Virus record (IMG/VR): IMGVR_UViG_3300036766_002289
Coordinates: 186,001 to 250,000 of that record
Length of the DNA: 64,000 nucleotides
Reading direction: 5' to 3' (one strand)
The number at the start of each line of letters is the position of its first letter. Positions within the stretch are counted from its first letter, which is position 1. The position numbers and the translations under genes were made by a program. Shown piece after piece: positions 165 to 60,207 of the stretch. Below the pieces are notes generated by a model that ran no database searches, had not been told where the DNA came from, and saw only the letters and a list, made by a program, of their open reading frames with translations.

Positions 165-419
165 ATGGCTGGATATCATCTGAATGACATTCCCCGTGGC
201 GAATACGGTGAGCTTTCTAAGGTAATTGAAGAAGCTTTAGAGCTAAAAGACGCTATGGAACAAGGGCAGAAATTGATGTGTCTTATTGAGCTTGCCGATA
301 TACTCGGGGCCATCGAAGGATATTTAGAAAAATATTATGAAGGCAAGATTACTGTTGATGATCTTTTTAACATGTCCTATGCTACCAAAAGAGCTTTTGA
401 GTCAGGATATAGAAAATGA
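165..419 (+). CDS. MazG-like/all-alpha NTP pyrophosphohydrolase
   Basis: KVIEEALEL...IELADIL (EExxE...ExxD) motif in an 84-aa helical protein. Confidence 0.6.
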   Translation: MAGYHLNDIPRGEYGELSKVIEEALELKDAMEQGQKLMCLIELADILGAIEGYLEKYYEGKITVDDLFNMSYATKRAFESGYRK

Positions 420-1309
420 GTATTGAAGATAAGAAACGTGGAGCATTCTGGGGCTTAATTATCGGGGACGCTCTTGGGGCACCCGTAGAATTTAAAATGC
501 CTGGTGAATTTGTTCCAGTAACAGATTACCAGAGTGGTGGCCCACATAGCCTTAATAAGGGCGAATGGACTGATGATACAAGTCTTGCTCTTGCTCTTGC
601 TGATAGTCTGGCCAATGGCTGGAATACTAAAGACCAACTTGACAAGTATTGTAGCTGGTATGAAGAAGGCAAGTACTCCGTCAATGGTTGGTGTTTTGAT
701 ATCGGTGGCACTACAAAACATGCCTTGGAAAACTATAGGGACAGTGGTAATCCAGAAACTTGTGGGCTAGCCGATGATGATTATTCAGGGAATGGTTCGA
801 TTATGAGATTGGCACCAGTGCCAATTAAATATTCAGAATTGTTTTTTGATCTAGATGAACTCATCAGATTAGCAGAAGAATCTAGTGCTACAACTCATGC
901 AAGTAAGAAATGTAGAGATTGTTGTGCATACCTAGCCACATTAATAGCTGGATTAATCAATGGAATTGATAGGGAAATCTTACTGAATGACCCTTATTAT
1001 ATTCCACCAAAAGTATGTACAGCCGTAAGACTAGTCGCAGAAGGTAGTTACCGCAAAAACAAGGTCAAAGGCAGTGGTTATGTAGTAGAAAGCTTGGAAG
1101 CTGCTTTATGGGCTTTTCACAAAGCTGAGAATTTCAGGAAAGCTGTCTTGGCTGCGGTTAATCTAGGAGATGATGCGGACACTACGGCGGCGGTCTGTGG
1201 GCAGTTGGCTGGGGCTTATTGGGGGTTTGAAGCTATTCCAGAGGAATGGCGTATTAATTTAGCTAAAAATGATTTAATAGAAGGCTATTTTAATGCCCTG
1301 ATAAAATAA
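416..1309 (+). CDS. ADP-ribosylglycohydrolase (DraG/ARH family)
   Basis: GDALGAPVEF, WTDDT, GNGSIMRLAP, TTH, NLGDDADTTAAVCGQLAGA motifs. Confidence 0.95.
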   Translation: MSIEDKKRGAFWGLIIGDALGAPVEFKMPGEFVPVTDYQSGGPHSLNKGEWTDDTSLALALADSLANGWNTKDQLDKYCSWYEEGKYSVNGWCFDIGGTTKHALENYRDSGNPETCGLADDDYSGNGSIMRLAPVPIKYSELFFDLDELIRLAEESSATTHASKKCRDCCAYLATLIAGLINGIDREILLNDPYYIPPKVCTAVRLVAEGSYRKNKVKGSGYVVESLEAALWAFHKAENFRKAVLAAVNLGDDADTTAAVCGQLAGAYWGFEAIPEEWRINLAKNDLIEGYFNALIK

Positions 1310-9061: not shown

Positions 9062-9823
9062 ATGGACAGAAAACAATACAATAAGGAATATAGAGAAAAA
9101 AGAATAAATCAAGGGCTCTGTGTCGGTTGCGGCTTCCCTAATAATGGAAAAAATCTATGCCAGGAATGTTTGGACAAAGCAACGGCTAAAAGAAAAGAAA
9201 ATATTTTAAAAAGGTTATGTGGATGTGGCAAGCCTAGAAGAGATGGATATCAATCATGTGAAATTTGCTCAAATAAATATAACAAAAATGAATACAACAA
9301 AAATAAAAGATTAATATCTTTGCAAAGGAAAAGTAAAAGAAATAAAAATAAAGAAAAAGGACTATGTGTTTTTTGCACTAAGCCTGCATTGCCCGATAAG
9401 ACCACATGCGAATATCATTTGCAAAAAAGAACAAACTTTAGAAAGCATTGTAGGGAAAAAGGAATTTGTCCTCAATGTGGAGAATTGAAGTCTAATCCAA
9501 AAAATACTTATTGTGATGAACACCAATCTCATTGGAAAATTCGCAAACATGCTGAGGGACTTCGAATCAAAAAAGAAGTAATAAATTATTACAATGAACT
9601 ATCTCAATGTGTATGTTGTGGGGAATCAAATTTGGTCTTTTTGACAATCGACCATATGGACAACAATGGTGCCGAACACCGAAAAAAAATTAATCGTTTT
9701 GGCGAAGGATTTTACAGATGGCTTATAAGCAATAATTTCCCAAATGGTTATCAAGTCTTATGTTTCAATTGTAATTGTGGTAGAAAGATTAATGGTGGTA
9801 TATGTCCTCACAAAATATTTTAG
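9062..9823 (+). CDS. HNH-type homing endonuclease with multiple Cys zinc-binding repeats
   Basis: Repeated CxxC...CxxC/H units; C-terminal CVCCGE...LTIDH...QVLCFNCN. Confidence 0.8.
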   Translation: MDRKQYNKEYREKRINQGLCVGCGFPNNGKNLCQECLDKATAKRKENILKRLCGCGKPRRDGYQSCEICSNKYNKNEYNKNKRLISLQRKSKRNKNKEKGLCVFCTKPALPDKTTCEYHLQKRTNFRKHCREKGICPQCGELKSNPKNTYCDEHQSHWKIRKHAEGLRIKKEVINYYNELSQCVCCGESNLVFLTIDHMDNNGAEHRKKINRFGEGFYRWLISNNFPNGYQVLCFNCNCGRKINGGICPHKIF

Positions 9824-10530
9824 AAAAACTCATTGATTTCCCCAGGATTTTCCATCTCCCGCATAAGCCTAATGCACAAAGAAGCGACCTTATTGCATCA
9901 CAAGAAGATGTGAAGGTTATTTTCGATAACGAAGAAACCATCGTTGAAGAAAAGCTTGACGCTGCAAACTCAGGAATACTTTTTAGTGAAGAAGGTAATT
10001 TTTCAATTCGAAATAGAAATAATATTCTAAATAAAGGCAAAACTGGCCATCTGCGAGGCCCTGCTAAAATGCAATTTGCTCCAATTTATAATTGGGCTTA
10101 CGAAAATAGAGATAAGTTTGAAACGCTTAATAATAATTTAGGATTTGAAGTAAGTGTATTTGGGGAATGGATGGTGGCACTTCATGGGGTTAAGTATGAC
10201 AAACTACCATCTTGGTTCATTCCTTATGAATTATATGATTGGGAACATAAGAAATTTATTTCTCACAAAATTGTTAGAAAATCTTTGCAGGAAGCAGGTT
10301 TTGTGACAGTGCCGTTATTGCATGAAGGACGATTGCCTAATTGGGAGATTTTTGATAAGTTTTGTGCAGAAAAGAGTCCCTATTCAACAACAGATTTAAG
10401 GGAAGGTGTGGTTGTGAAGGTGTCAGATGAGAAATATTTGACTCACAGATTCAAGATGGTTCGTAGGGGTTTTATACAGGGTTGCCACTGGAATGAACGT
10501 GCATTAACTAAGAATAAACTTTGTGATTGA
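9802..10530 (+). CDS. ATP-dependent RNA ligase family protein
   Basis: FPRIFHLP, motif I EEKLDAAN, FGEW, EGVVVK, RFKMVR. Confidence 0.8.
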   Translation: MSSQNILEKLIDFPRIFHLPHKPNAQRSDLIASQEDVKVIFDNEETIVEEKLDAANSGILFSEEGNFSIRNRNNILNKGKTGHLRGPAKMQFAPIYNWAYENRDKFETLNNNLGFEVSVFGEWMVALHGVKYDKLPSWFIPYELYDWEHKKFISHKIVRKSLQEAGFVTVPLLHEGRLPNWEIFDKFCAEKSPYSTTDLREGVVVKVSDEKYLTHRFKMVRRGFIQGCHWNERALTKNKLCD

Positions 10531-18172: not shown

Positions 18173-19060
18173 ATGAACTTAAGTGAACTAACCAGAGAGA
18201 CAATTAATCGTAAGATTATTAATGTATTAGAATCTAATCAAATGCCTTGGCAAAAACCTTGGTGTGGCTGGGGAAAGAATATTGGGTTCCACCGCAACGT
18301 TGGCTCTAATAGGAAATACTTTGGTATTAATTTCTTACTATTACAAATGTCGGCTAAACGTCATGGTTTTACCAGCAAATGGTGGGGTACCGTCCATGAC
18401 TTCAAGAAATTTGGTTATCAAGTAAGTGAACGTCCACCGAACGTTGAAACAGGAACTTGGGCCACAGAGATTATTTGTTATGCACATAATCGCTATACCA
18501 GCGACATTGAAACAATCTCAGAAGTAGTCTATAACTCTGAACAACTAACCCAGACTTTTGAAGCCTATAATCCAGCACCTAAGTTGAATGTAAATTATGA
18601 GTTATGTGAAAAAATTCTCAATAAAGTTCCAGTTAAGTTAGAAACTAATGATAGTGGACTTGCATTGTATCATTATCCGCCCCATGATTATATTACAATG
18701 CCTTCCCAAGTGGATTTTATGTTAGGATTGACTGGTTTACCTGGCTATTATGAATGTCTGGCACATGAATTGATTCATTATAGTGAAACAAGGTTAAATT
18801 TCCACACTGGATATGAAGCTATTAGAGAATTAAGGGCAGAGATTGGAGCGGCGATGTTGGTTCAAGAGTTAGGTTTGCCGCATAGCATTAACTTCATGAA
18901 TTTTAGGAAATGGTCAACCACCTGGATTAACTTTATGAATCGAGATACGGATTTGATTTTCAGGATTGCGGCAGCGGCTACCAAAGCAGTGGATTTTATC
19001 CTGGATTTCAGTAATATGAAAGAGGAAAGGTTCAATGAATTAAGTGAGGAAGCAGCATAA
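18173..19060 (+). CDS. ardC: ArdC-like antirestriction/ssDNA-binding protein with zincin domain
   Basis: PWQKPW, YFGINFLLL, W.T, DYITMP, AHELIH, ELRAEIGA, AAAATKAVDFI. Confidence 0.85.
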   Translation: MNLSELTRETINRKIINVLESNQMPWQKPWCGWGKNIGFHRNVGSNRKYFGINFLLLQMSAKRHGFTSKWWGTVHDFKKFGYQVSERPPNVETGTWATEIICYAHNRYTSDIETISEVVYNSEQLTQTFEAYNPAPKLNVNYELCEKILNKVPVKLETNDSGLALYHYPPHDYITMPSQVDFMLGLTGLPGYYECLAHELIHYSETRLNFHTGYEAIRELRAEIGAAMLVQELGLPHSINFMNFRKWSTTWINFMNRDTDLIFRIAAAATKAVDFILDFSNMKEERFNELSEEAA

Positions 19061-20444: not shown

Positions 20445-20897
20445 ATGATCGAATTTAAAACAGGCAATATTTTCGAGTCTGACTGCGAAGCTATCACCAA
20501 CACCGTGAATTGCGTGGGAATTATGGGTGGAGGCTTGGCAAAAGCATTCAAAAAGAACTACCCAGAAATGTTCAGGGAATATTCTGATGTTTGCTGCAAA
20601 TGTGAACTTTGGCCAGGCGTAATGCACATTTGGGAAAACCCTAATGGCACACCAAAATACATTGTTAATTTTCCAACCAAAGACGATTGGCGAAATCCTT
20701 CTGATATAGGTTTCATTATTGATGGTTTAGTGGCACTTAAAGATGAAATCATCAAAAGGGATATCAAATCAATTGCCATCCCTAGTTTGGGTTGTGGTTT
20801 AGGTGGCTTATCCTACGTGGACGTTAAAAAAGAAATTGAAAAATTCGCGGTCACATTACCTAATATTAAAATTATTGTTTATGAGCCATTAAGTTAA
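20445..20897 (+). CDS. Macrodomain protein (DarG-like ADP-ribose hydrolase)
   Basis: GNIF, NTVNCVGIMGGGLAKAFK, IVNFPTK..W, SIAIPSLGCGLGGL. Confidence 0.9.
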   Translation: MIEFKTGNIFESDCEAITNTVNCVGIMGGGLAKAFKKNYPEMFREYSDVCCKCELWPGVMHIWENPNGTPKYIVNFPTKDDWRNPSDIGFIIDGLVALKDEIIKRDIKSIAIPSLGCGLGGLSYVDVKKEIEKFAVTLPNIKIIVYEPLS

Positions 20898-20938: not shown

Positions 20939-21595
20939 ATGGATAATATGAACAATATATGCTTATGTGGATGTGGACAATTAACATATGTGGACAACAA
21001 AGGAAGACCCAACAAGTATGTAGTTGGACATAAAGGCAACAGCAGAATTTCTTCTTATGAAACTCCCATAAAGAAGAGATGTAATTTTTGTAAAAAGCTT
21101 TTAAATATTGAGAATTTTAGTTTTAGAAATTTAAAAACTCTTAATGGTCGCAGTTACAAACGTCCCAGATCAAGGTGCAAAAAATGTGAAAGTGCAATAG
21201 TATGCACTTACCAAAGTAGGCCAGGTGTTAGGAAACATCGCAATGAGCAAAGAAAAAATGATAAAACGGTCAAAAGGTGGATTCAGGAAAGAATATCTGC
21301 ATGGCGGAAAAAGACACTTAATTCTGATTTAACAACTGAATATTTATTGAAAGTTTACGAAGGACAGTCAGGCAGGTGTTATTACACTAATGCTTTATTA
21401 GAAGTTTTCAAGGATGAAGAATGGAGATTAAGGTATCAGCAAAGTATATCCATAGACAGATTAGACCCTGATAAAGGATATATGCAAGGCAATGTTGCTT
21501 TTTGTTTATATGTAGTCAATACTATGAAGGGTACTCTTACAGAAAAACAATTCTATGATAGAATGAAGCACATTCTAATGAACCGTGGCATCTAA
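20939..21595 (+). CDS. HNH/His-Me-finger homing endonuclease-like protein
   Basis: CLCGCG, CNFCK, RCKKC, QSGRCYYT, SIDRLDPDKGY..GNV. Confidence 0.75.
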   Translation: MDNMNNICLCGCGQLTYVDNKGRPNKYVVGHKGNSRISSYETPIKKRCNFCKKLLNIENFSFRNLKTLNGRSYKRPRSRCKKCESAIVCTYQSRPGVRKHRNEQRKNDKTVKRWIQERISAWRKKTLNSDLTTEYLLKVYEGQSGRCYYTNALLEVFKDEEWRLRYQQSISIDRLDPDKGYMQGNVAFCLYVVNTMKGTLTEKQFYDRMKHILMNRGI

Positions 21596-22496: not shown

Positions 22497-23138
22497 ATGA
22501 AAGACTATCCATCAATTCCGAAAGTTCTAAACGAACATATCAACTCTGATTGCATAGCCTTTCGGAAATACGACGGAAGCCAGATTCGTGTTGAATGGAC
22601 TAAAAAGAAAGGCTGGCATAAATTCGCCACCAGAGGCCAACTATTCGATGCTTCAGAGAAGACATTCGGCTGTGCTGTAGATATTTTTCGCAATATGTTC
22701 GTTGGAAATTTAACCCAAGTCATTGTTGGCGAGTATCCTAAAGCCACAGAAGTCCTAGCATTTCTAGAATTCTTCGGGCCACGTTCCTTTGCTGGAATGC
22801 ATGAACCTGATGATCCCAAAGAATTAGTCCTATTCGATATTAACATACATAAAAAAGGTATTTTAAGTCCAGTTGAGTTTGTCCAGAACTTTTCTCATCT
22901 TCGTTCTGCTGAGATTGTATATGAAGGTAAATTAACCGAAGGATTTATCAAAGACGTAAGGGATGGTGCCGTACCTAGCGAATCCGCTGACCGTCCACAT
23001 CCTCACATGCTTGATGAAGGCGTTGTTGTTAAGGGCGGAACTGGACACAAAATTTGGATGGCGAAAATTAAGACTTGGGAATATCTTAAAAAGATTCAGA
23101 AGTTTTTTGGGTCTACGTATGGCAGGTATTGGGAATGA
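22497..23138 (+). CDS. RNA ligase/nucleotidyltransferase-fold protein
   Basis: YPSI, KYDGSQ (motif I), EFFG, LFDI, EGVVVK, KIKT. Confidence 0.7.
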   Translation: MKDYPSIPKVLNEHINSDCIAFRKYDGSQIRVEWTKKKGWHKFATRGQLFDASEKTFGCAVDIFRNMFVGNLTQVIVGEYPKATEVLAFLEFFGPRSFAGMHEPDDPKELVLFDINIHKKGILSPVEFVQNFSHLRSAEIVYEGKLTEGFIKDVRDGAVPSESADRPHPHMLDEGVVVKGGTGHKIWMAKIKTWEYLKKIQKFFGSTYGRYWE

Positions 23139-26076: not shown

Positions 26077-26706
26077 ATGTTTGAATTATTTACTGATAGA
26101 GCTAGAAAAGTGGTCACGTTAGCCAGAGAAGAAGCTTTCAAATTTAATTTTGAATATGTGGGTACTGAACATATTCTAGCAGGCTTACTCAAAGAGAACA
26201 CTGGTGTCGCACACCATGTCCTTGAAGCACTTGGAATTAGTATTGGCAAAATTCACTTGGAAATAGAAAAAATTGTTCAACCCCCTGGTGATGTTGAAGT
26301 TGATAGAGAAAGACTTGCCTTCTCGCCAAGAGCAAGGAACGTTTTCACTTATGCTGTGGATGAGGCTAAATTATTAGGGCATACATACATTGGCACCGAA
26401 CATATTCTGCTAGGTTTGTTAAGAGAAGATAGCAGTACTGCTGGACAAATCCTACTAAACTTAGGCATTAATCTAAAAGAAACTCGTGCTGCCGTCTTAG
26501 AACTACTAGGCTTTACTGACGAACGGTATGAATTTGAACAAGTTTATAGTAATGGTGGCGACCTTTACAATGTAGTAAAGATTTTGTCCAATGGCGTTAA
26601 GGAACATATGGCTTTTTATGACAACAAAAATAAGAAGATAAGTGTTCCAAAAGCTGTAGACTTGGATGATTTGGGTAAGATTATTAACGCTATAAGGAAC
26701 CTATGA
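26077..26706 (+). CDS. Stand-alone ClpC/ClpA N-terminal (Clp_N repeat) domain protein
   Basis: MFELFTDRARKVV.LAREEA...GTEHILAGLL; second repeat FSPRAR...YIGTEHILLGLLRE; no AAA domain. Confidence 0.9.
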   Translation: MFELFTDRARKVVTLAREEAFKFNFEYVGTEHILAGLLKENTGVAHHVLEALGISIGKIHLEIEKIVQPPGDVEVDRERLAFSPRARNVFTYAVDEAKLLGHTYIGTEHILLGLLREDSSTAGQILLNLGINLKETRAAVLELLGFTDERYEFEQVYSNGGDLYNVVKILSNGVKEHMAFYDNKNKKISVPKAVDLDDLGKIINAIRNL

Positions 26707-42637: not shown

Positions 42638-43126
42638 ATGATCCAAATAGCAATTATACTAAGTAAAAGACTCTGTGAACCAAGGGCCGCTCATGCCGAA
42701 AGAGTCGCTAATTTATTAGGCAACGCTTCCGAGGTTGAAATCTCCGCTGCGTATCTCCATGATATCATTGAAGATAGGGCGATGGATGAAGACGAACTAC
42801 TAGAAATAATGGGAGAGGAAGTAACTGATATTGTTTTAGAGCTTACAGACACTTCTTTTAGTAAGATCAGGGAATATGAATATTTAAGGTGGGCGAGTCA
42901 TTCGGCCAAGAGGATTAAGTTGGCAGATCGTATTGACAATATTAAGAAGAGAATGACCAGTAATCATGTAATGTATTATGCATTGGAGTCTGAGAGGTTA
43001 TTGGGGGTTCTCAAGGGCACGGATAGGTGTTTAGAATGTATTTTACGTTCATTTGTGGTAGAATTGAAGGCAAGGTGTGCTAAATACCCACATGAAAACC
43101 TTCTTGGAAAGTTTGGTTCAGCCTAG
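42638..43126 (+). CDS. RelA/SpoT-type HD hydrolase (small alarmone hydrolase-like)
   Basis: HAERVA, AAYLHDIIED, V.ELTD, IKLADRIDN. Confidence 0.75.
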   Translation: MIQIAIILSKRLCEPRAAHAERVANLLGNASEVEISAAYLHDIIEDRAMDEDELLEIMGEEVTDIVLELTDTSFSKIREYEYLRWASHSAKRIKLADRIDNIKKRMTSNHVMYYALESERLLGVLKGTDRCLECILRSFVVELKARCAKYPHENLLGKFGSA

Positions 43127-57800: not shown

Positions 57801-58415
57801 CTACTTCCCACCACCGAATGCGAAAGCCAATTGGACTTACGGGGACCGTAGGACTACCCTTTATAAGCATTGGTATATGTCCGTAACCCATACTGTTAAA
57901 GACTTTAGGGCTATGGTGTGGCAGTTTGCCCAAAATAAATGCATATCTAGAAGGAAAAGTGGTTTCAAAACAGAAGAACTAGCAGTAAAATGGTGTGAGA
58001 ACAAAGTAGAAATGGAAATAGTAGACGCCAGTTTAACTCCGCAGTATGCAGGTTCAGGAATATGACATATTTAGTTTTGTATCTAGCAATTGGCTTTTTT
58101 GTTGCTGTTTCATCTTTATCATTGATAGATGACGCACCAACTTGGGCCAAAGTTACGTGTTTTTTAATTGACTTGTTTTTGTGGCCATTACACCTGTTGG
58201 TTGCAGCAGGCATATGGATATTACAGAGGACTAAAAAATGACAATCGAAGAAATGATTAAGCGGGATAACAGAACTTGGGAAGAAATGTCTTTAAGGGAA
58301 AGAGTTAGTCTTTTTCTTAGGCATAGCAGAGATTGTGAAGTTCATAATAGATGGCCAGTAAAACCATGTGATTGTGGCTTAAGCATAGTCAGTGCTGAAT
58401 TGGATAAGATTCTTG

Positions 58416-58560
58416 GCGGTTGATGGTAAGTGGCAAACCAACGGTGAAGGGCCGCTCTGGGACCAATACAACGACAAAAAGTATTCGAGTGATTCGCGGT
58501 GACTCGGAAAAAGTATGTCAATACGTACCTGGCGAGAAGGTTCGATTCCTTCCAACCGCA
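58416..58560 (+). ncRNA. tRNA-like RNA (145 nt) with expanded central region
   Basis: Acceptor stem GCGGTTG/CAACCGC plus discriminator A; D arm GGT-AAGTGGCAA-ACC; T arm GAAGG-TTCGATT-CCTTC; about 95 nt between D and T arms; no encoded CCA. Confidence 0.75.
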
Positions 58561-58563
58561 CTT

Positions 58564-58579
58564 ATACCTTAGTTGTACC
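58564..58579 (+). promoter_or_regulatory. 16-bp motif copy 7 (ATACCTTAGTTGTACC)
   Basis: Directly after the tRNA-like RNA; ATG at 58581. Confidence 0.75.
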
Positions 58580-58778
58580 AATGATGATAAGAAACGAACA
58601 ACGTGATAAAGAAATTGAACTAGGTGGTGCTGTTTACGCTGCCTGTATCAAGATTTTTGAAGATATGGAACATGAAGAAGAAGTTTATGGGAATGGACAC
58701 CACATGGCCCAAGATGTAGCTGCTTTTGCTGAACATTTGTTAAATGAGCGATGGCGAGATAAATTAGGTGGAGCCTAC

Positions 58779-58794
58779 TTAGCTTAGTTGTACC
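58779..58794 (+). promoter_or_regulatory. 16-bp motif copy 8 (TTAGCTTAGTTGTACC)
   Basis: Followed by AGAGGA and ATG at 58805. Confidence 0.75.
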
Positions 58795-59160
58795 AGAGGA
58801 AAGCATGGATACCGATAATTTGATCCTTCTTTTGGACAAATTGACCAAGCATTGCTACGTCAAGCAAAAGTATTGCATAGATGATTGTAAGGGATGTGGT
58901 GGGTTGCGCGGCAACCATGCAATGAGTTGCTATGTAGAGGAAGCAGAAAAAATCGTAAAGCAATATAACACTAAAACAGAAGAATTTGCTTTAGAGGAAG
59001 TGAAATGAAACTGTTTCTTTTTGGTCTTTGGCTAGGTCTAACCTTCGGCAGTACAATAACTTACATCGTTTGTGACCTTAATCGGCCTAAGATCAGAATT
59101 GAAGTGCGGACTTTACCTTCACCCTGTTATGTTCCAGTTGGGCGATGAACGGAGAGTATA

Positions 59161-59694
59161 ATGAATATTGTAGAAAATGCCGATAAGATTGCTGAAAAAG
59201 CCCATAAGGGGCAGCTTCGCAAGTGGAGCAATAATGTGCCGTACATTGTCCACCCAATTGGAGTTACCGAAAAAGTTAAGACTCTTGATGGTGTTGACGA
59301 TATTGATCTGGCGGCGGCAAAATTGCATGATGTTCTTGAAGATTGCGGCGAACATTGGGCCGCTGTTATTGAGGAAGAATGCGGCAAGGAAGTTCTCGAT
59401 TTAGTTAAGGAATTAACGTTCCCGACAGAAGGCGCGGAATGGGCCAATCGTTCCCGCGCAGAAAAGAATGTTATTCGATTTGCTCAAATGGAGCGAATGA
59501 CGCAAAGGGCCAAGCGTATTAAGATGGTTGATCGTTGGTATAATCTCAACGACATGAAGAATGCTCCCTATAAGCTTATCAAGAAGACCACTGAGGAATC
59601 TTGGAAGCTTTTGGAAATCTGCGGCGGTGCAGATAAGGCAATGGCCAAAGAACTTGAGGAAGCAATTAAAAACTTGGAAAGGCGGCTCAACTAG
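59161..59694 (+). CDS. RelA/SpoT-type HD hydrolase (small alarmone hydrolase/Mesh1-like)
   Basis: AHKGQLRK...PYIVHP..V, AAKLHDVLED, VKELT, IKMVDRWYNL. Confidence 0.85.
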   Translation: MNIVENADKIAEKAHKGQLRKWSNNVPYIVHPIGVTEKVKTLDGVDDIDLAAAKLHDVLEDCGEHWAAVIEEECGKEVLDLVKELTFPTEGAEWANRSRAEKNVIRFAQMERMTQRAKRIKMVDRWYNLNDMKNAPYKLIKKTTEESWKLLEICGGADKAMAKELEEAIKNLERRLN

Positions 59695-59697
59695 CTC

Positions 59698-59713
59698 ATA
59701 GCTTAGTTGTACC
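59698..59713 (+). promoter_or_regulatory. 16-bp motif copy 9
   Basis: ATAGCTTAGTTGTACC, intergenic. Confidence 0.75.
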
Positions 59714-60146
59714 GTTGTTCTTAGAAAGGCGGTTGAATTAACATGGGCTATTGTGCGTGGATTCAAAAGGCTGAGTTCAGCATTCTTTCGGAACGAATCC
59801 CAGAAGCTTTTGCTGCTGTAATGGCTTCTAAAGGCTGTTATCATTCTCCGAAGAATGCTGTCAAAGATGTTAAACATTTTGAACATCTTCCGCTTTTGCT
59901 TCAGTTTACCGAGGCTGTCAAAGCCACATATGGTTTTGTGTTGACGCCTAATAAGTCTGGGGATATTGACAAGATTTCCCATGAATGGGAAAAGGTGCAT
60001 GGTGATGAACTTTGGGAAGCACTTGCACCCTTCGTCAAAAGTGGTTCTTATATTCAATGGTGCGGTGAAGATGGTGAAAAATGGCGGAATGTATTCCAAG
60101 GTGGGAAAACCAAGCAAGTTAAGCCAGTTTTAACCTGGCCCGAGTG

Positions 60147-60162
60147 ATAGCTTAGTTGTACC
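60147..60162 (+). promoter_or_regulatory. 16-bp motif copy 10
   Basis: ATAGCTTAGTTGTACC, at gene junction. Confidence 0.75.
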
Positions 60163-60207
60163 TTTACAAATGTGGTTTTTGTGGTAGAATATAAAAGGAG
60201 GCTCATT

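What the first reader, a model, noticed from the sequence alone, without database searches (positions are those of the whole stretch)
58416..58560. 145-nt tRNA-like RNA with the anticodon/variable region replaced by a multi-hairpin domain
Seen: perfect 7-bp acceptor stem, D arm with GG, and canonical T arm (TTCGATT). Between them lie about 95 nt that can form CGGT/GCCG, AATAC/GTATT, CGAGT/ACTCG and GTATGT/ACGTAC hairpins, the last three possibly closed by CTGGG/CCTGG. There is no canonical 7-nt anticodon loop and no CCA. The insert is too short for tmRNA or a group I intron. Inference: either a tRNA-scaffolded ncRNA (decoy for anticodon nucleases, RelA or synthetases) or a tRNA with a non-canonical protein-spliced intron. 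The window also encodes two RNA-ligase-fold proteins and an orphan aaRS-like domain, but any link to them is speculative.
Basis: partly seen in the sequence, partly recalled or inferred. Interest (0 to 1): 0.75.

Follow-up and report, generated by a model that had tools for sequence, protein, structure and literature searches.

The report
Anticodon-less phage tRNA-like RNA, giant arm
A jumbo phage carries a conserved 145-base RNA gene built on a transfer-RNA frame whose anticodon loop is gone and whose side arm has grown into a long rod; similar genes occur in other phages, so it is probably a stable non-decoding RNA of a little-described kind.

Summary
The tRNA-like element at window 58416-58560 (+) is real. 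It has a perfect 7-bp acceptor stem, a 3-bp D stem with a GG loop, a canonical T arm, discriminator A and no encoded CCA. This acceptor/T-arm combination occurred 0 times in 20 random genomes.

ARAGORN and Rfam do not call it. It lies in a 157-nt gap between ORFs of a 390-kb phage.

A roughly 91%-identical variant in other metagenomes (runs X2 and X7) gives the fold. It carries three compensatory double changes (53:111, 59:103, 122:136), one U.G to U:A change, and a 1-nt indel that rules out coding.

The interior is not three separate hairpins. It is a short hairpin at the anticodon-arm position with a 5-nt loop, followed by one 76-nt rod at the variable-arm position. The distal 43 nt of the rod are invariant and contain a symmetric AAAAGUA/AAAAGUA internal loop.

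No deletion restores a canonical tRNA. tmRNA and Y-RNA features are absent.

The same architecture recurs in a Chitinophagaceae prophage element derived from host tRNA-Leu, and in a minority of at least 114 long tRNA-Leu-frame genes on IMG/VR phage contigs, some of them in arrays.

Best reading: a non-decoding ncRNA on a tRNA scaffold. Its function is unknown. The closest named analogue is T4 RNAC.

The parts
58416..58560 (+). Whole tRNA-like RNA gene ('D', 145 nt including discriminator A; D index = window coordinate minus 58415).
   Evidence: Sequence. It fills the gap between ORF 58238-58423 and ORF 58581-58787. In runs X2 and X7, homology resumes at 58415, one base before D's first base, after a 146-nt deletion upstream. 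Six G.U pairs in the fold would be A.C mismatches on the other strand, so the RNA strand is +.
58416..58422 (+). Acceptor stem, 5' strand (GCGGUUG). It pairs with 58553-58559.
   Evidence: Seven Watson-Crick pairs. Together with the T arm this occurred 0 times in 20 random genomes.
58425..58439 (+). D arm. The 3-bp stem is G10-C24, G11-C23, U12-A22. The 9-nt loop is AAGUGGCAA, with A14, G18G19 and A21 equivalents. A 3-bp D stem is a class II tRNA trait.
   Evidence: Invariant in X2 and X7. Model R1 scores T4's two class II tRNAs (Leu, Ser) highest among T4 tRNAs.
58442..58454 (+). Short hairpin at the anticodon-arm position: CGGU-GAAGG-GCCG. The loop is 5 nt. Read as a 7-nt loop it would be UGAAGGG with G at position 33. 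There is no usable anticodon loop.
   Evidence: Invariant in X2 and X7. ARAGORN takes it as the 'anticodon arm (aag)' once the rod is shortened.
58457..58532 (+). 76-nt rod at the variable-arm position. P1 is 58457-61/58528-32. P2 is 58467-69/58525-27. P3 is 58473-76/58516-19. P4 is 58484-90/58502-08. The apical part is 58491-58501.
   Evidence: Consensus fold of the window and X2 sequences. Compensatory changes are 58468 A>G with 58526 T>C, and 58474 A>G with 58518 T>C. The change 58531 G>A turns U43.G116 into U:A.
58477..58483 (+). 5' strand of the symmetric 7x7 internal loop (AAAAGUA). The partner strand, also AAAAGUA, is at 58509-58515. The loop lies inside the 43-nt block 58475-58517 that is identical in X2.
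   Evidence: That it is a protein-binding site is inference only.
58536..58552 (+). T arm GAAGG-UUCGAUU-CCUUC.
   Evidence: A compensatory A:U to C:G change is seen in X2 (58537 A>C with 58551 T>G).
58553..58560 (+). Acceptor stem 3' strand (CAACCGC) plus discriminator A. The next bases are CTT, so no CCA is encoded.
   Evidence: The other tRNA genes of this phage also lack an encoded CCA. The genome encodes a CCA-adding-family enzyme.
58568..58580 (+). Promoter-like phage motif CTTAGTTGTACCA directly after D and directly before the ATG at 58581. It marks the 3' limit of the element.
   Evidence: About 100 copies on the + strand of the genome, nearly all just upstream of start codons or tRNAs. 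The same arrangement is seen after ordinary tRNAs, for example at genome 40805 and 302461.
58581..59008 (+). Two small orphan ORFs (68 aa at 58581-58787; 67 aa at 58805-59008) that travel with D as one cassette.
   Evidence: The X2 contig is collinear over 58415-59013 and diverges beyond. Relatives G001/L002 and L061 lack the whole cassette. No homologues or families were found.

Best explanation
D is a gene for a stable, non-decoding RNA built on a class II (tRNA-Leu-like) tRNA frame.

Shown:
- The frame is intact: a 7-bp acceptor stem, discriminator A (A73), a 3-bp D stem with a GG loop, and a canonical T arm.
- The arm at the anticodon position is capped by a 5-nt loop.
- The variable arm is expanded into a 76-nt rod whose pairing is maintained by compensatory changes.
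- The distal 43 nt of the rod are invariant between the two known variants.

Inferred:
- The RNA is made as part of a longer + strand transcript. No promoter or terminator flanks it.
- It is cut out like a tRNA, by RNase P at the 5' end and RNase Z or exonucleases at the 3' end.
- It receives CCA from the phage's own or the host's CCA-adding enzyme and is thereby stabilised.
- It cannot read codons.
- The working part is the rod, in particular the two-fold symmetric AAAAGUA/AAAAGUA internal loop and the apical hairpin. This part most likely binds a protein, possibly a dimer, of the host or the phage.

In short, it is a natural 'tRNA scaffold' that presents an effector or decoy RNA. The variable-arm position is where an insertion least disturbs the tRNA elbow and acceptor end.
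For: - Anatomy.
- Non-randomness: 0 hits in 20 random genomes.
- Conservation in at least four samples from different studies (X1, X2, X5, X7). An upstream deletion ends at the base before D's first base.
- Of 12 substitutions between the variants, 6 form three compensatory pairs and 1 turns U.G into U:A. The other 5, and the 1-nt insertion, lie in unpaired positions. No pair is broken.
- Random-mutation controls: at least 3 compensatory pairs in 3 of 1000 runs when the structure is re-predicted each time. P about 1e-4 on the fixed consensus structure. P about 0.007 for the 2 pairs already present in the fold predicted from the window sequence alone.
- The 1-nt indel excludes coding through D. 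In X2 a TAG also arises in the frame of the 90-aa gene call that overlaps D (and sequence).
- ARAGORN accepts D as a tRNA as soon as the rod is shortened anywhere within D index 42-120. Only the arm length blocks detection.
- The phage encodes a CCA-adding-family enzyme, and its tRNA genes also lack CCA.
- Independent example 1: L032:5717-5854. Its D and T arms are nearly identical to host-family tRNA-Leu(CAA). Its acceptor stem is entirely re-paired. Its anticodon loop is reduced to CCGG. Its variable arm is about 70 nt. It has A73.
- Independent example 2: at least 114 long tRNA-Leu-frame genes on IMG/VR contigs. Of these, 92 have perfect acceptor stems, and 79 of the 95 best-formed have A73. 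8 of 80 distinct sequences have a hairpin with a 3-4-nt loop right after the D arm, followed by a further 64-90 nt that in several folds as one long arm.
- Precedent: T4 RNAC, 139 nt with a canonical T arm, stable, function unknown.
Against: - There is no expression data. No RNA run holds the sequence.
- Only one diverged variant of D is available, so covariation rests on three pairs. That variant was rebuilt from a list of differences, not read directly.
- The 5' 43 nt do not vary, so the D arm and the short hairpin are supported only by analogy. RNAalifold prefers an alternative pairing of 14-19 with 36-41.
- Position 8 is A, not the near-universal U.
- The whole-molecule fold energy is not unusual (z = -1.05).
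- The closest full-genome relative G001 and the related contig L061 lack the element, so it is dispensable.
- The protein-binding role of the rod is pure inference. No partner was identified, and the neighbouring ORFs have no recognisable domains.
- Homology between D and the other long tRNA-like genes is not shown. The resemblance is in architecture only (R1 gives 11.2 bits for L032).
Confidence: 0.55

Rival explanations
1. Chargeable tRNA-Leu mimic. D is aminoacylated, most plausibly by the host LeuRS, which in bacteria needs A73 and the tRNA elbow but neither the anticodon nor the variable arm. It would then act as a sink for the synthetase or EF-Tu, or as an amino-acid donor outside translation.
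For: A73 and a class II frame. The L032 element is visibly derived from tRNA-Leu(CAA) and keeps A73. 79 of 95 IMG/VR elements have A73. The LeuRS identity rules are from my own knowledge of the E. coli system.
Against: A8 replaces U8. The acceptor sequences differ freely between elements; in L032 the first pair is C1:G72. The phage has no class I Leu/Ile/Val-type synthetase and no L/F-transferase. Nothing here explains the conserved rod.
Confidence: 0.12
2. Cis-acting processing or boundary element. The tRNA-like fold only serves as an RNase P/RNase Z cutting site that separates the upstream message from the downstream cassette, or as a recombination boundary for swapping cassettes. The released RNA has no role of its own.
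For: There is no promoter or terminator around D, so it must be cut from a longer transcript. D sits at the edge of a variable cassette, and the X2 deletion ends one base before its 5' end. In L111 similar tRNA-frame elements alternate with small ORFs.
Against: A cutting site needs only the acceptor/T minihelix. It does not explain a 76-nt rod with three stems kept by compensatory or conservative changes and a 43-nt invariant core. D is single-copy in its genome, so it has no recombination partner.
Confidence: 0.12
3. Precursor of a decoding tRNA whose insert is removed by an unknown splicing route, like the 'enigmatic introns' of megaphage tRNAs.
For: Huge-phage tRNAs with unexplained inserts are reported (PMC6784885). 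This phage and its relative have tRNA genes with inserts, for example L008:9431-9578, which scores 43 bits with the Rfam tRNA model. An RNA ligase gene is in the window.
Against: I tried all single deletions that keep the D arm and leave 66-101 nt. Most ARAGORN calls with a 3-nt anticodon (395 of 432) were the non-canonical hairpin read as 'Leu(aag)', with G at position 33 and three secure stem pairs. The few others (Phe, Arg and so on) were not examined further, and none restored a canonical anticodon arm. After removal of the rod the loop is still 5 nt. The insert is not at position 37/38. There is no group I match, and 76 nt is too short for one. The genome has no RtcB.
Confidence: 0.05
4. 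Decaying tRNA pseudogene with a chance insertion; no function.
For: Not called by tRNA finders. Absent from the closest relatives. Overall identity between the variants (about 91%) is no higher than in the neighbouring ORFs.
Against: Three compensatory pairs and no broken pair. Two 43-nt invariant blocks. A perfect acceptor stem and T arm. The upstream deletion spares D to the base.
Confidence: 0.05
5. Miniature tmRNA.
For: Relative G001 has a 140-nt tmRNA (Rfam 49.8 bits, threshold 47), so very small tmRNAs exist in this phage group. The rod leaves the frame where tmRNA helix 2 does.
Against: The third acceptor pair is G3:C70, not G3:U70. There is no UUCGAC box. D has a true D stem. Any tag frame is shifted by the 1-nt indel in X2. 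There is no Rfam or ARAGORN tmRNA call. The phage has no SmpB.
Confidence: 0.01

Closest known systems
Phage T4 RNAC (species 1 RNA, rnaC; NC_000866 70908-71046)
   Same: A phage-encoded RNA of about 140 nt with a canonical T arm (CCGGG-UUCGAAU-CCCGG), an acceptor-like pairing of its ends and long internal hairpins instead of an anticodon arm. It accumulates during infection and its function is still unknown (PMC3014915, PMC9697503).
   Different: No detectable sequence relation: R1 gives 12.5 bits, E 0.06, over part of rnaC. RNAC has an imperfect acceptor stem and no recognisable D arm, and it lies inside the tRNA cluster. D has a complete class II frame, a single rod at the variable-arm position, and lies about 58 kb from the nearest tRNA gene called in this genome.
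Class II tRNAs (bacterial tRNA-Leu, Ser, Tyr)
   Same: 7/5 acceptor/T geometry, a 3-bp D stem with a long GG loop, an extra arm between the anticodon and T arms, and A73 as in tRNA-Leu. The L032 element is demonstrably a tRNA-Leu(CAA) derivative.
   Different: Natural variable arms are about 11-24 nt (own knowledge). Here the arm is 76 nt. The anticodon loop is reduced to 5 nt, so decoding is not possible.
tRNAs with 'enigmatic introns' in Lak megaphages (Devoto et al. 2019, PMC6784885)
   Same: Over-long tRNA genes in very large phages that tRNA finders cannot classify. Their inserts are highly conserved, and one insert is itself tRNA-like. Compare genome 169289-169473 here.
   Different: Those were read as anticodon-loop introns of otherwise normal tRNAs. 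D has no restorable anticodon arm, and its insert sits at the variable-arm position.
tmRNA tRNA-like domain with helix 2
   Same: Acceptor stem and T arm with a long irregular helix leaving in the direction of a class II variable arm (own knowledge of TLD-SmpB structures). The RNA does no decoding of its own.
   Different: D lacks G3:U70, a tag reading frame, pseudoknots, and any Rfam or ARAGORN call.
Bacterial Y RNA YrlA with Ro/Rsr
   Same: A non-coding RNA with a tRNA-like module that tRNA enzymes recognise. It is also found in some jumbo phages (PMC7824862).
   Different: In YrlA the RNA ends form the Ro-binding stem, not the acceptor stem (own knowledge). This phage has no TROVE/Ro gene and D has no Rfam match.
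Engineered 'tRNA scaffold' for expressing recombinant RNA in E. coli (for example PMC3753655 and PMC5397188, seen)
   Same: A foreign structured RNA is grafted into a tRNA body so that it is processed and protected like a tRNA.
   Different: That is a laboratory design, usually grafted into the anticodon stem. D would be a natural counterpart grafted at the variable arm.

Membership tests
Canonical decoding tRNA | 7-bp acceptor stem, D arm with G18G19, T arm with the TΨC loop | tested here: met
Canonical decoding tRNA | 5-bp anticodon stem with a 7-nt loop, U33 and a purine at position 37 | tested here: not met
   No such hairpin anywhere in D. At the correct position the loop is GAAGG, 5 nt. 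The 7-nt reading has G at position 33.
Canonical decoding tRNA | Recognised by ARAGORN or the Rfam tRNA model (RF00005); length about 70-95 nt | tested here: not met
   D is 145 nt.
Intron-containing tRNA (group I, or protein-spliced) | Removal of one contiguous insert restores a canonical cloverleaf | tested here: not met
   I tried all single deletions leaving 66-101 nt. No canonical product resulted. The dominant call was a non-canonical 'Leu(aag)' with G at position 33.
Intron-containing tRNA (group I, or protein-spliced) | Group I intron core, or an insert at position 37/38 with a splicing ligase available | tested here: not met
   No Rfam intron match. The insert follows a complete hairpin, at the variable-arm position. 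The genome has no RtcB.
tmRNA | G3:U70 in the acceptor stem; a conserved tag reading frame; a match to the tmRNA models | tested here: not met
   The pair is G3:C70. The 1-nt indel in X2 shifts every frame. No ARAGORN or Rfam tmRNA call, whereas the relative's 140-nt tmRNA is called.
Y RNA / YrlA | Ro-binding stem formed by the RNA ends; a Ro (TROVE) gene in the genome | tested here: not met
   The ends form a tRNA acceptor stem. TROVE is absent. No Rfam match.
Class II tRNA frame (Leu-like) | 3-bp D stem with a long GG loop, an extra arm between the anticodon-position arm and the T arm, A73 | tested here: met
   R1 ranks T4 tRNA-Leu and tRNA-Ser first among T4 tRNAs. In G001, however, the best matches were the suppressor and Gly tRNAs, so the Leu assignment itself is tentative.
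Class II tRNA frame (Leu-like) | Aminoacylation by LeuRS | not testable with these tools
   Needs a charging assay.
Phage stable tRNA-like RNA of the T4 RNAC type | Phage-encoded, about 120-150 nt, tRNA-like acceptor end and T arm, non-decoding interior | tested here: met
Phage stable tRNA-like RNA of the T4 RNAC type | Sequence or structure homology to rnaC; accumulation as a stable RNA | tested here: inconclusive
   R1 gives 12.5 bits, E 0.06, on part of rnaC. No expression data.
Long tRNA-Leu-frame genes of IMG/VR phages (found here) | Intact acceptor, D and T arms; a central region that is too long and has no consistent anticodon; in a subset, a small-looped hairpin followed by a long arm | tested here: met
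   D shares the architecture. It does not share the GGCGGAAYTGG D arm or the AGTCAGG frame, so homology is not shown.

The most novel reading that the evidence does not exclude
D is one instance of a widespread and so far uncharacterised design in phages. The design uses a class II (Leu-type) tRNA frame as a natural scaffold. The anticodon loop is deleted so that the RNA cannot decode. A variable, structured 'cargo' of 20-120 nt is grafted at the anticodon or variable-arm region. Some phages carry arrays of such genes that share one constant frame but have different cargos (13 copies in 5 kb in L111). The cargos would be the effectors, for example protein sponges, decoys or antisense RNAs. The frame would supply processing, CCA addition and stability.
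Probability: 0.35. Interest if true: 0.8.

Novelty: new variant of a known kind. Interest (0 to 1): 0.68.

Why it matters
- Phage tRNA genes are usually read as codon-usage helpers or as a way around tRNA-cleaving defences. This element shows that a tRNA frame can be kept under selection while decoding is abolished and a new structured domain is grown from the variable arm.
- If the RNA is stable and binds a partner, it would be a natural counterpart of the laboratory 'tRNA scaffold'.
- It might also offer a lead on the 50-year-old question of what T4 RNAC-type RNAs do.
- The side finding may matter more than this single locus. More than a hundred long tRNA-Leu-frame genes occur on phage contigs, some in arrays with one constant frame and variable inserts. 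This suggests a whole class of phage small RNAs that tRNA finders and Rfam largely miss or mislabel.
- Practically, the current gene call overlapping D (a 90-aa ORF from 58515) is probably wrong.

Tried and rejected
- Standard detectors. ARAGORN with and without introns and tmRNA mode and Rfam at gathering score and at E <= 10 gave nothing for D.
- Homologue searches that found nothing:
  - blastn against 50,697 phage records;
  - three exact or gapped patterns from D in IMG/VR and JGI metagenomes;
  - flanking ORFs in IMG/VR and in the 5.8-billion-protein set (self only);
  - covariance model R1 on the own genome, on the full relative G001, and on contigs L061/L062 (only ordinary tRNAs);
  - D against 400 Bacteroidota genomes (chance-level hits only).
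- The relative of the upstream membrane ORF (P0003) led to contigs without D.
- Intron hypothesis: exhaustive single deletions, rejected.
- tmRNA, Ro/Y RNA, RtcB splicing, L/F-transferase and a phage LeuRS-type enzyme: the genes or features are absent.
- Stop-codon recoding as an explanation for the suppressor tRNA(CUA): no excess of long frames when TAG is read through.
- The twin-AAAAGUA pattern as a family signature: of 10 pattern hits, several look like tmRNA 3' ends or unrelated DNA and only L032 is tRNA-like. In L032 the two motifs are not opposed across a helix. The motif may therefore be coincidental.
- The L032 element has no full-length relatives in 400 Chitinophagaceae genomes.
- Pfam and PHROGs on the neighbouring small ORFs gave nothing.
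- The X2 variant could not be passed to the alignment tools, because it has no reference. Covariation was therefore computed in scripts.
Full report
**Setting.** The window is positions 186001-250000 of a 390,039-bp IMG/VR virus record with 39% G+C. It is a jumbo phage from a sediment metagenome. ARAGORN tRNA genes in it, mostly between 21 and 74 kb. These include a suppressor tRNA(CUA), but no tRNA-Ser or tRNA-Tyr. The finding, called D here, lies at window 58416-58560, which is genome 244416-244560. D index means window coordinate minus 58415.

- Acceptor stem GCGGTTG/CAACCGC, seven Watson-Crick pairs.
- D arm with a 3-bp stem (G10-C24, G11-C23, U12-A22) and the loop AAGUGGCAA.
- T arm GAAGG-TTCGATT-CCTTC.
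- Discriminator A, followed by CTT rather than CCA.

A strict scan for this acceptor plus T-arm combination finds 32 places in the real genome. It finds none in 20 first-order Markov genomes of the same size.

D fills the 157-nt gap between ORF 58238-58423 and ORF 58581-58787. Neither ARAGORN nor Rfam reports anything for it. The whole-molecule fold energy is unremarkable (z = -1.05).

**Related sequences.**
- The closest full-length relative is G001, a 373-kb record whose neighbouring HD-domain protein is 85% identical. G001 lacks D. The segment holding D and two small ORFs is replaced there by two unrelated ORFs. A third relative, L061, shows the same replacement.
- Pattern and protein searches in IMG/VR, JGI metagenomes and the large protein set found no other copy.
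- The index of sequencing runs shows that D itself is held in three further samples from other studies: X5 (freshwater, 61% of D's sampled words), and X2 and X7 (sediment, 31% each).
- I laid their contigs on the window. In X2 and X7 the homology skips 58269-58414, where most of the upstream 61-aa ORF is replaced by 12 nt. It resumes at 58415, one base before D begins. It then runs through D and both downstream ORFs to 59013.
- Within D the X2 variant differs by 12 substitutions and one inserted G. X7 covers D only to 58525 and shows the same changes there.
- The counts of differences per contig piece match the listed rows, so the list for D is complete. Still, I rebuilt the variant from that list rather than reading it directly.

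**The fold.** I folded the two variants together, with and without tRNA constraints.
- Acceptor stem, D arm and T arm as above.
- A short hairpin where the anticodon arm should be: C27-G39, G28-C38, G29-C37, U30.G36, with the loop GAAGG.
- One long rod where a class II tRNA has its variable arm:
  - P1 is 42-46/113-117.
  - P2 is 52-54/110-112.
  - P3 is 58-61/101-104.
  - A symmetric 7x7 internal loop follows. Both of its strands read AAAAGUA (62-68 and 94-100).
  - P4 is 69-75/87-93.
  - A small apical stem-loop closes the rod.

The differences between the variants fit this fold closely:
- A53:U111 becomes G:C.
- A59:U103 becomes G:C.
- A122:U136 in the T stem becomes C:G.
- U43.G116 becomes U:A.
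- The remaining five substitutions and the inserted G fall in unpaired positions.
- No pair is broken.
- D index 1-43 and 60-102 are identical in both variants.

Controls:
- When random mutations of the same kinds are placed on D and the structure is re-predicted each time, three or more compensatory pairs arise in 3 of 1000 trials.
- On the fixed consensus structure the probability is about 1e-4.
- For the two pairs already present in the fold predicted from the window sequence alone, it is about 0.007.

Three further conclusions follow:
- Six G.U pairs fix the strand as +.
- The 1-nt indel excludes a reading frame through D. In X2 the change at 58531 also creates TAG in the frame of the 90-aa gene call (P0001) that overlaps D.

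**What it is not.**

*Decoding tRNA or intron-bearing precursor.*
- I removed every possible single stretch that keeps the D arm and leaves 66-101 nt.
- Most ARAGORN calls with a 3-nt anticodon (395 of 432) took the short hairpin as the anticodon arm, 'Leu(aag)'. That reading has G at position 33 and three secure stem pairs.
- ARAGORN makes this call wherever in D index 42-120 the cut is made.
- So only the arm length blocks detection, and no splice restores a canonical anticodon loop.
- There is no group I signature, and the genome has no RtcB.

*tmRNA.*
- The third acceptor pair is G3:C70.
- There is no conserved tag frame and no model match.
- Size alone would not exclude it, because relative G001 has a 140-nt tmRNA that passes Rfam's threshold.

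*Y RNA.*
- The ends form an acceptor stem.
- The genome has no Ro gene.

**What it most resembles.**

*A class II frame.* A 3-bp D stem, an extra arm between the anticodon-position hairpin and the T arm, and A73 are class II (Leu-type) traits. Model R1, built from D, ranks T4's tRNA-Leu and tRNA-Ser first among T4's eight tRNAs. In G001, however, it ranks the suppressor and Gly tRNAs first, so the Leu label is tentative.

*A second instance in a prophage.* A pattern search for the twin AAAAGUA motif plus a T loop found a 138-nt element in a Chitinophagaceae MAG, L032:5717-5854.
- It sits in a prophage-like early region with an HTH repressor, an AAA_23 ATPase, RecT and a metallo-beta-lactamase-fold gene.
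- Its D arm and T arm are almost identical to the tRNA-Leu(CAA) genes of that bacterial family.
- Its acceptor stem has been replaced on both strands with pairing kept.
- Its anticodon arm is now TCGAC-CCGG-GTCGA.
- Its variable arm is about 70 nt and folds as one arm.
- It keeps A73.
- This is the same architecture as D, and its origin from tRNA-Leu is visible.

- 92 elements have a perfect 7-bp acceptor stem and 107 have a full T stem.
- 79 of the 95 best-formed elements have A73.
- There are 80 distinct sequences of about 120-150 nt.
- ARAGORN assigns them no consistent anticodon.
- Rfam's tRNA model reaches some of them just above threshold, and no other family matches the inserts.
- Eight distinct elements have a hairpin with a 3-4-nt loop right after the D arm, followed by 64-90 nt more that in several folds as one long arm.
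- The largest subgroup has constant ends (AGTCAGG ... ACAGGTTCGAATCCTGT-CCTGACT-A) and very different middles of 20-120 nt.
- Many contigs hold several copies. L111 holds 13 in 5 kb, interleaved with small ORFs and next to a normal tRNA cluster.
- D does not share these sequences, so I claim shared design, not shown homology.

*Named precedents.*
- T4 RNAC is 139 nt with a canonical T arm. Its function is still unknown (PMC3014915, PMC9697503).
- Lak megaphage tRNAs carry 'enigmatic introns' (PMC6784885).

**How it most likely works.**

What is shown is a conserved, structured, non-coding tRNA-frame RNA gene without an anticodon loop.

The rest is inferred:
- No promoter or terminator flanks D.
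- A phage promoter-like motif, CTTAGTTGTACCA, starts eight bases after D. It occurs about 100 times on the + strand, just upstream of start codons or tRNAs.
- D is therefore probably cut from a longer transcript by RNase P and 3' processing enzymes.
- It would then receive CCA. The phage encodes a CCA-adding-family enzyme, and none of its tRNA genes encodes CCA.
- The variable-arm position is where a large graft least disturbs the elbow and the acceptor end.
- The invariant distal rod, with its two-fold symmetric purine-rich loop, is the likely working surface, probably for a protein.

I put about 0.55 on this scaffold-plus-effector reading. Much less can be said about the partner. Rivals are listed separately:
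- a chargeable Leu mimic (0.12);
- a mere processing or boundary signal (0.12);
- a spliced pre-tRNA (0.05);
- a pseudogene (0.05);
- a tmRNA (0.01).

**Context genes.** The window is an accessory region. It encodes:
- an ADP-ribosylglycohydrolase;
- a macro domain protein;
- an ArdC-like protein;
- an RNA ligase (9802-10527);
- a weak class II synthetase-like fragment (2382-2981);
- two HD_4 proteins, one of them 600 nt downstream of D.

None is close enough or co-inherited with D. Only the two orphan ORFs at 58581-59008 travel with it, and they have no recognisable domains.

**Verdict.** It is a new variant of a known but poorly understood kind, the phage tRNA-like stable RNAs. The survey suggests the kind is much larger than the literature I could search indicates.

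Noticed in passing
window 58568-58580, 58783-58795, 59702-59714, 60151-60163, 12852, 13689, 16244, 34586, 34772, 36678 (motif starts); about 100 copies genome-wide: A highly conserved motif (a)TAgCTTAGTTGTACCA occurs almost only on the + strand. It lies 0-25 nt upstream of start codons and of some tRNAs, so it is probably a phage-specific promoter. No copy lies between window 36678 and 58568, so D sits at the edge of a 22-kb block without the motif.
   Followed up: partly
G000 genome (outside the window): 21124-21241, 21378-21501, 22949-23079, 169289-169473, about 306848-306990: Further over-long tRNA-like genes not called by ARAGORN. The first three share an internal motif (ACTTGGAC-hairpin-GTCCCC ... 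CTTACAAAC) that also follows some ordinary tRNAs. The 185-nt element at 169289 contains nested T-arm-like and D-arm-like pieces, like the 'tRNA within an intron' reported for Lak phages. The element near 306848 has two hairpins inserted in the anticodon stem.
   Followed up: partly
L021:8082-8221 (G001:305082-305221): The relative phage encodes a miniature tmRNA of about 140 nt. It has G3:U70 and a GGUUUCGAC box, and scores 49.8 bits with Rfam RF00023 (threshold 47). A possible tag ends in ...QVA. It has no counterpart in the window's genome, and that genome has no SmpB gene.
   Followed up: partly
L008:9431-9578 (G001:49031-49178): A 148-nt gene that Rfam calls a tRNA (43.3 bits). It has the anticodon loop CUUUAAG (anticodon UUA, an ochre-suppressor type, or UAA) followed by an insert of about 88 nt before the 3' half of the anticodon stem.
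   Followed up: no
L111:7183-12206 (IMGVR_UViG_3300042888_001929); also L170, L171, L101, L103, L073, L112, L160: Arrays of tRNA-frame genes with a constant acceptor stem and T arm (AGTCAGG ... ACAGGTTCGAATCCTGTCCTGACTA) and different middles of 20-120 nt. L111 has 13 copies in 5 kb, alternating with small ORFs beside a normal tRNA cluster. At least 114 IMG/VR contigs carry long tRNA-Leu-frame genes.
   Followed up: partly
L032:5717-5854 (-), Chitinophagaceae MAG JAYRZH010000016.1: A 138-nt derivative of host tRNA-Leu(CAA) in a prophage-like early region. It has a new but fully paired acceptor stem, an anticodon loop reduced to CCGG, and a variable arm of about 70 nt.
   Followed up: yes
G000 genome 170512-170586 (outside the window): A suppressor tRNA(CUA) is present, but there is no sign that TAG is read as sense. 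TAG read-through lengthens ORFs less than TGA or TAA read-through does, and TAG ends 91 ORFs of at least 100 aa on the + strand.
   Followed up: partly
window 58515-58787: The 90-aa gene call on record (P0001) starts inside D. The promoter-like motif ending at 58580 and the TAG created at 58530-58532 in the X2 variant indicate that the true start is ATG 58581, giving 68 aa.
   Followed up: yes
window 58238-58423: The 61-aa ORF upstream of D, whose stop codon lies inside D's acceptor stem, is almost wholly deleted in the X2 and X7 variants. There, 146 nt are replaced by GACAAGGCTTTA. The ORF is therefore dispensable and independent of D.
   Followed up: yes
window 416-1306, 2382-2981, 9802-10527, 18173-19057, 20445-20894, 26077-26703, 42638-43123, 59161-59691: Accessory genes of the window, in coordinate order: ADP-ribosylglycohydrolase; a weak class II aaRS-like fragment (E 2e-5, below the cut-off); RNA ligase (PF09414); ArdC-like protein with a zincin domain; macro domain protein; Clp_N protein; two HD_4 (RelA/SpoT-type hydrolase) proteins.
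   Followed up: no
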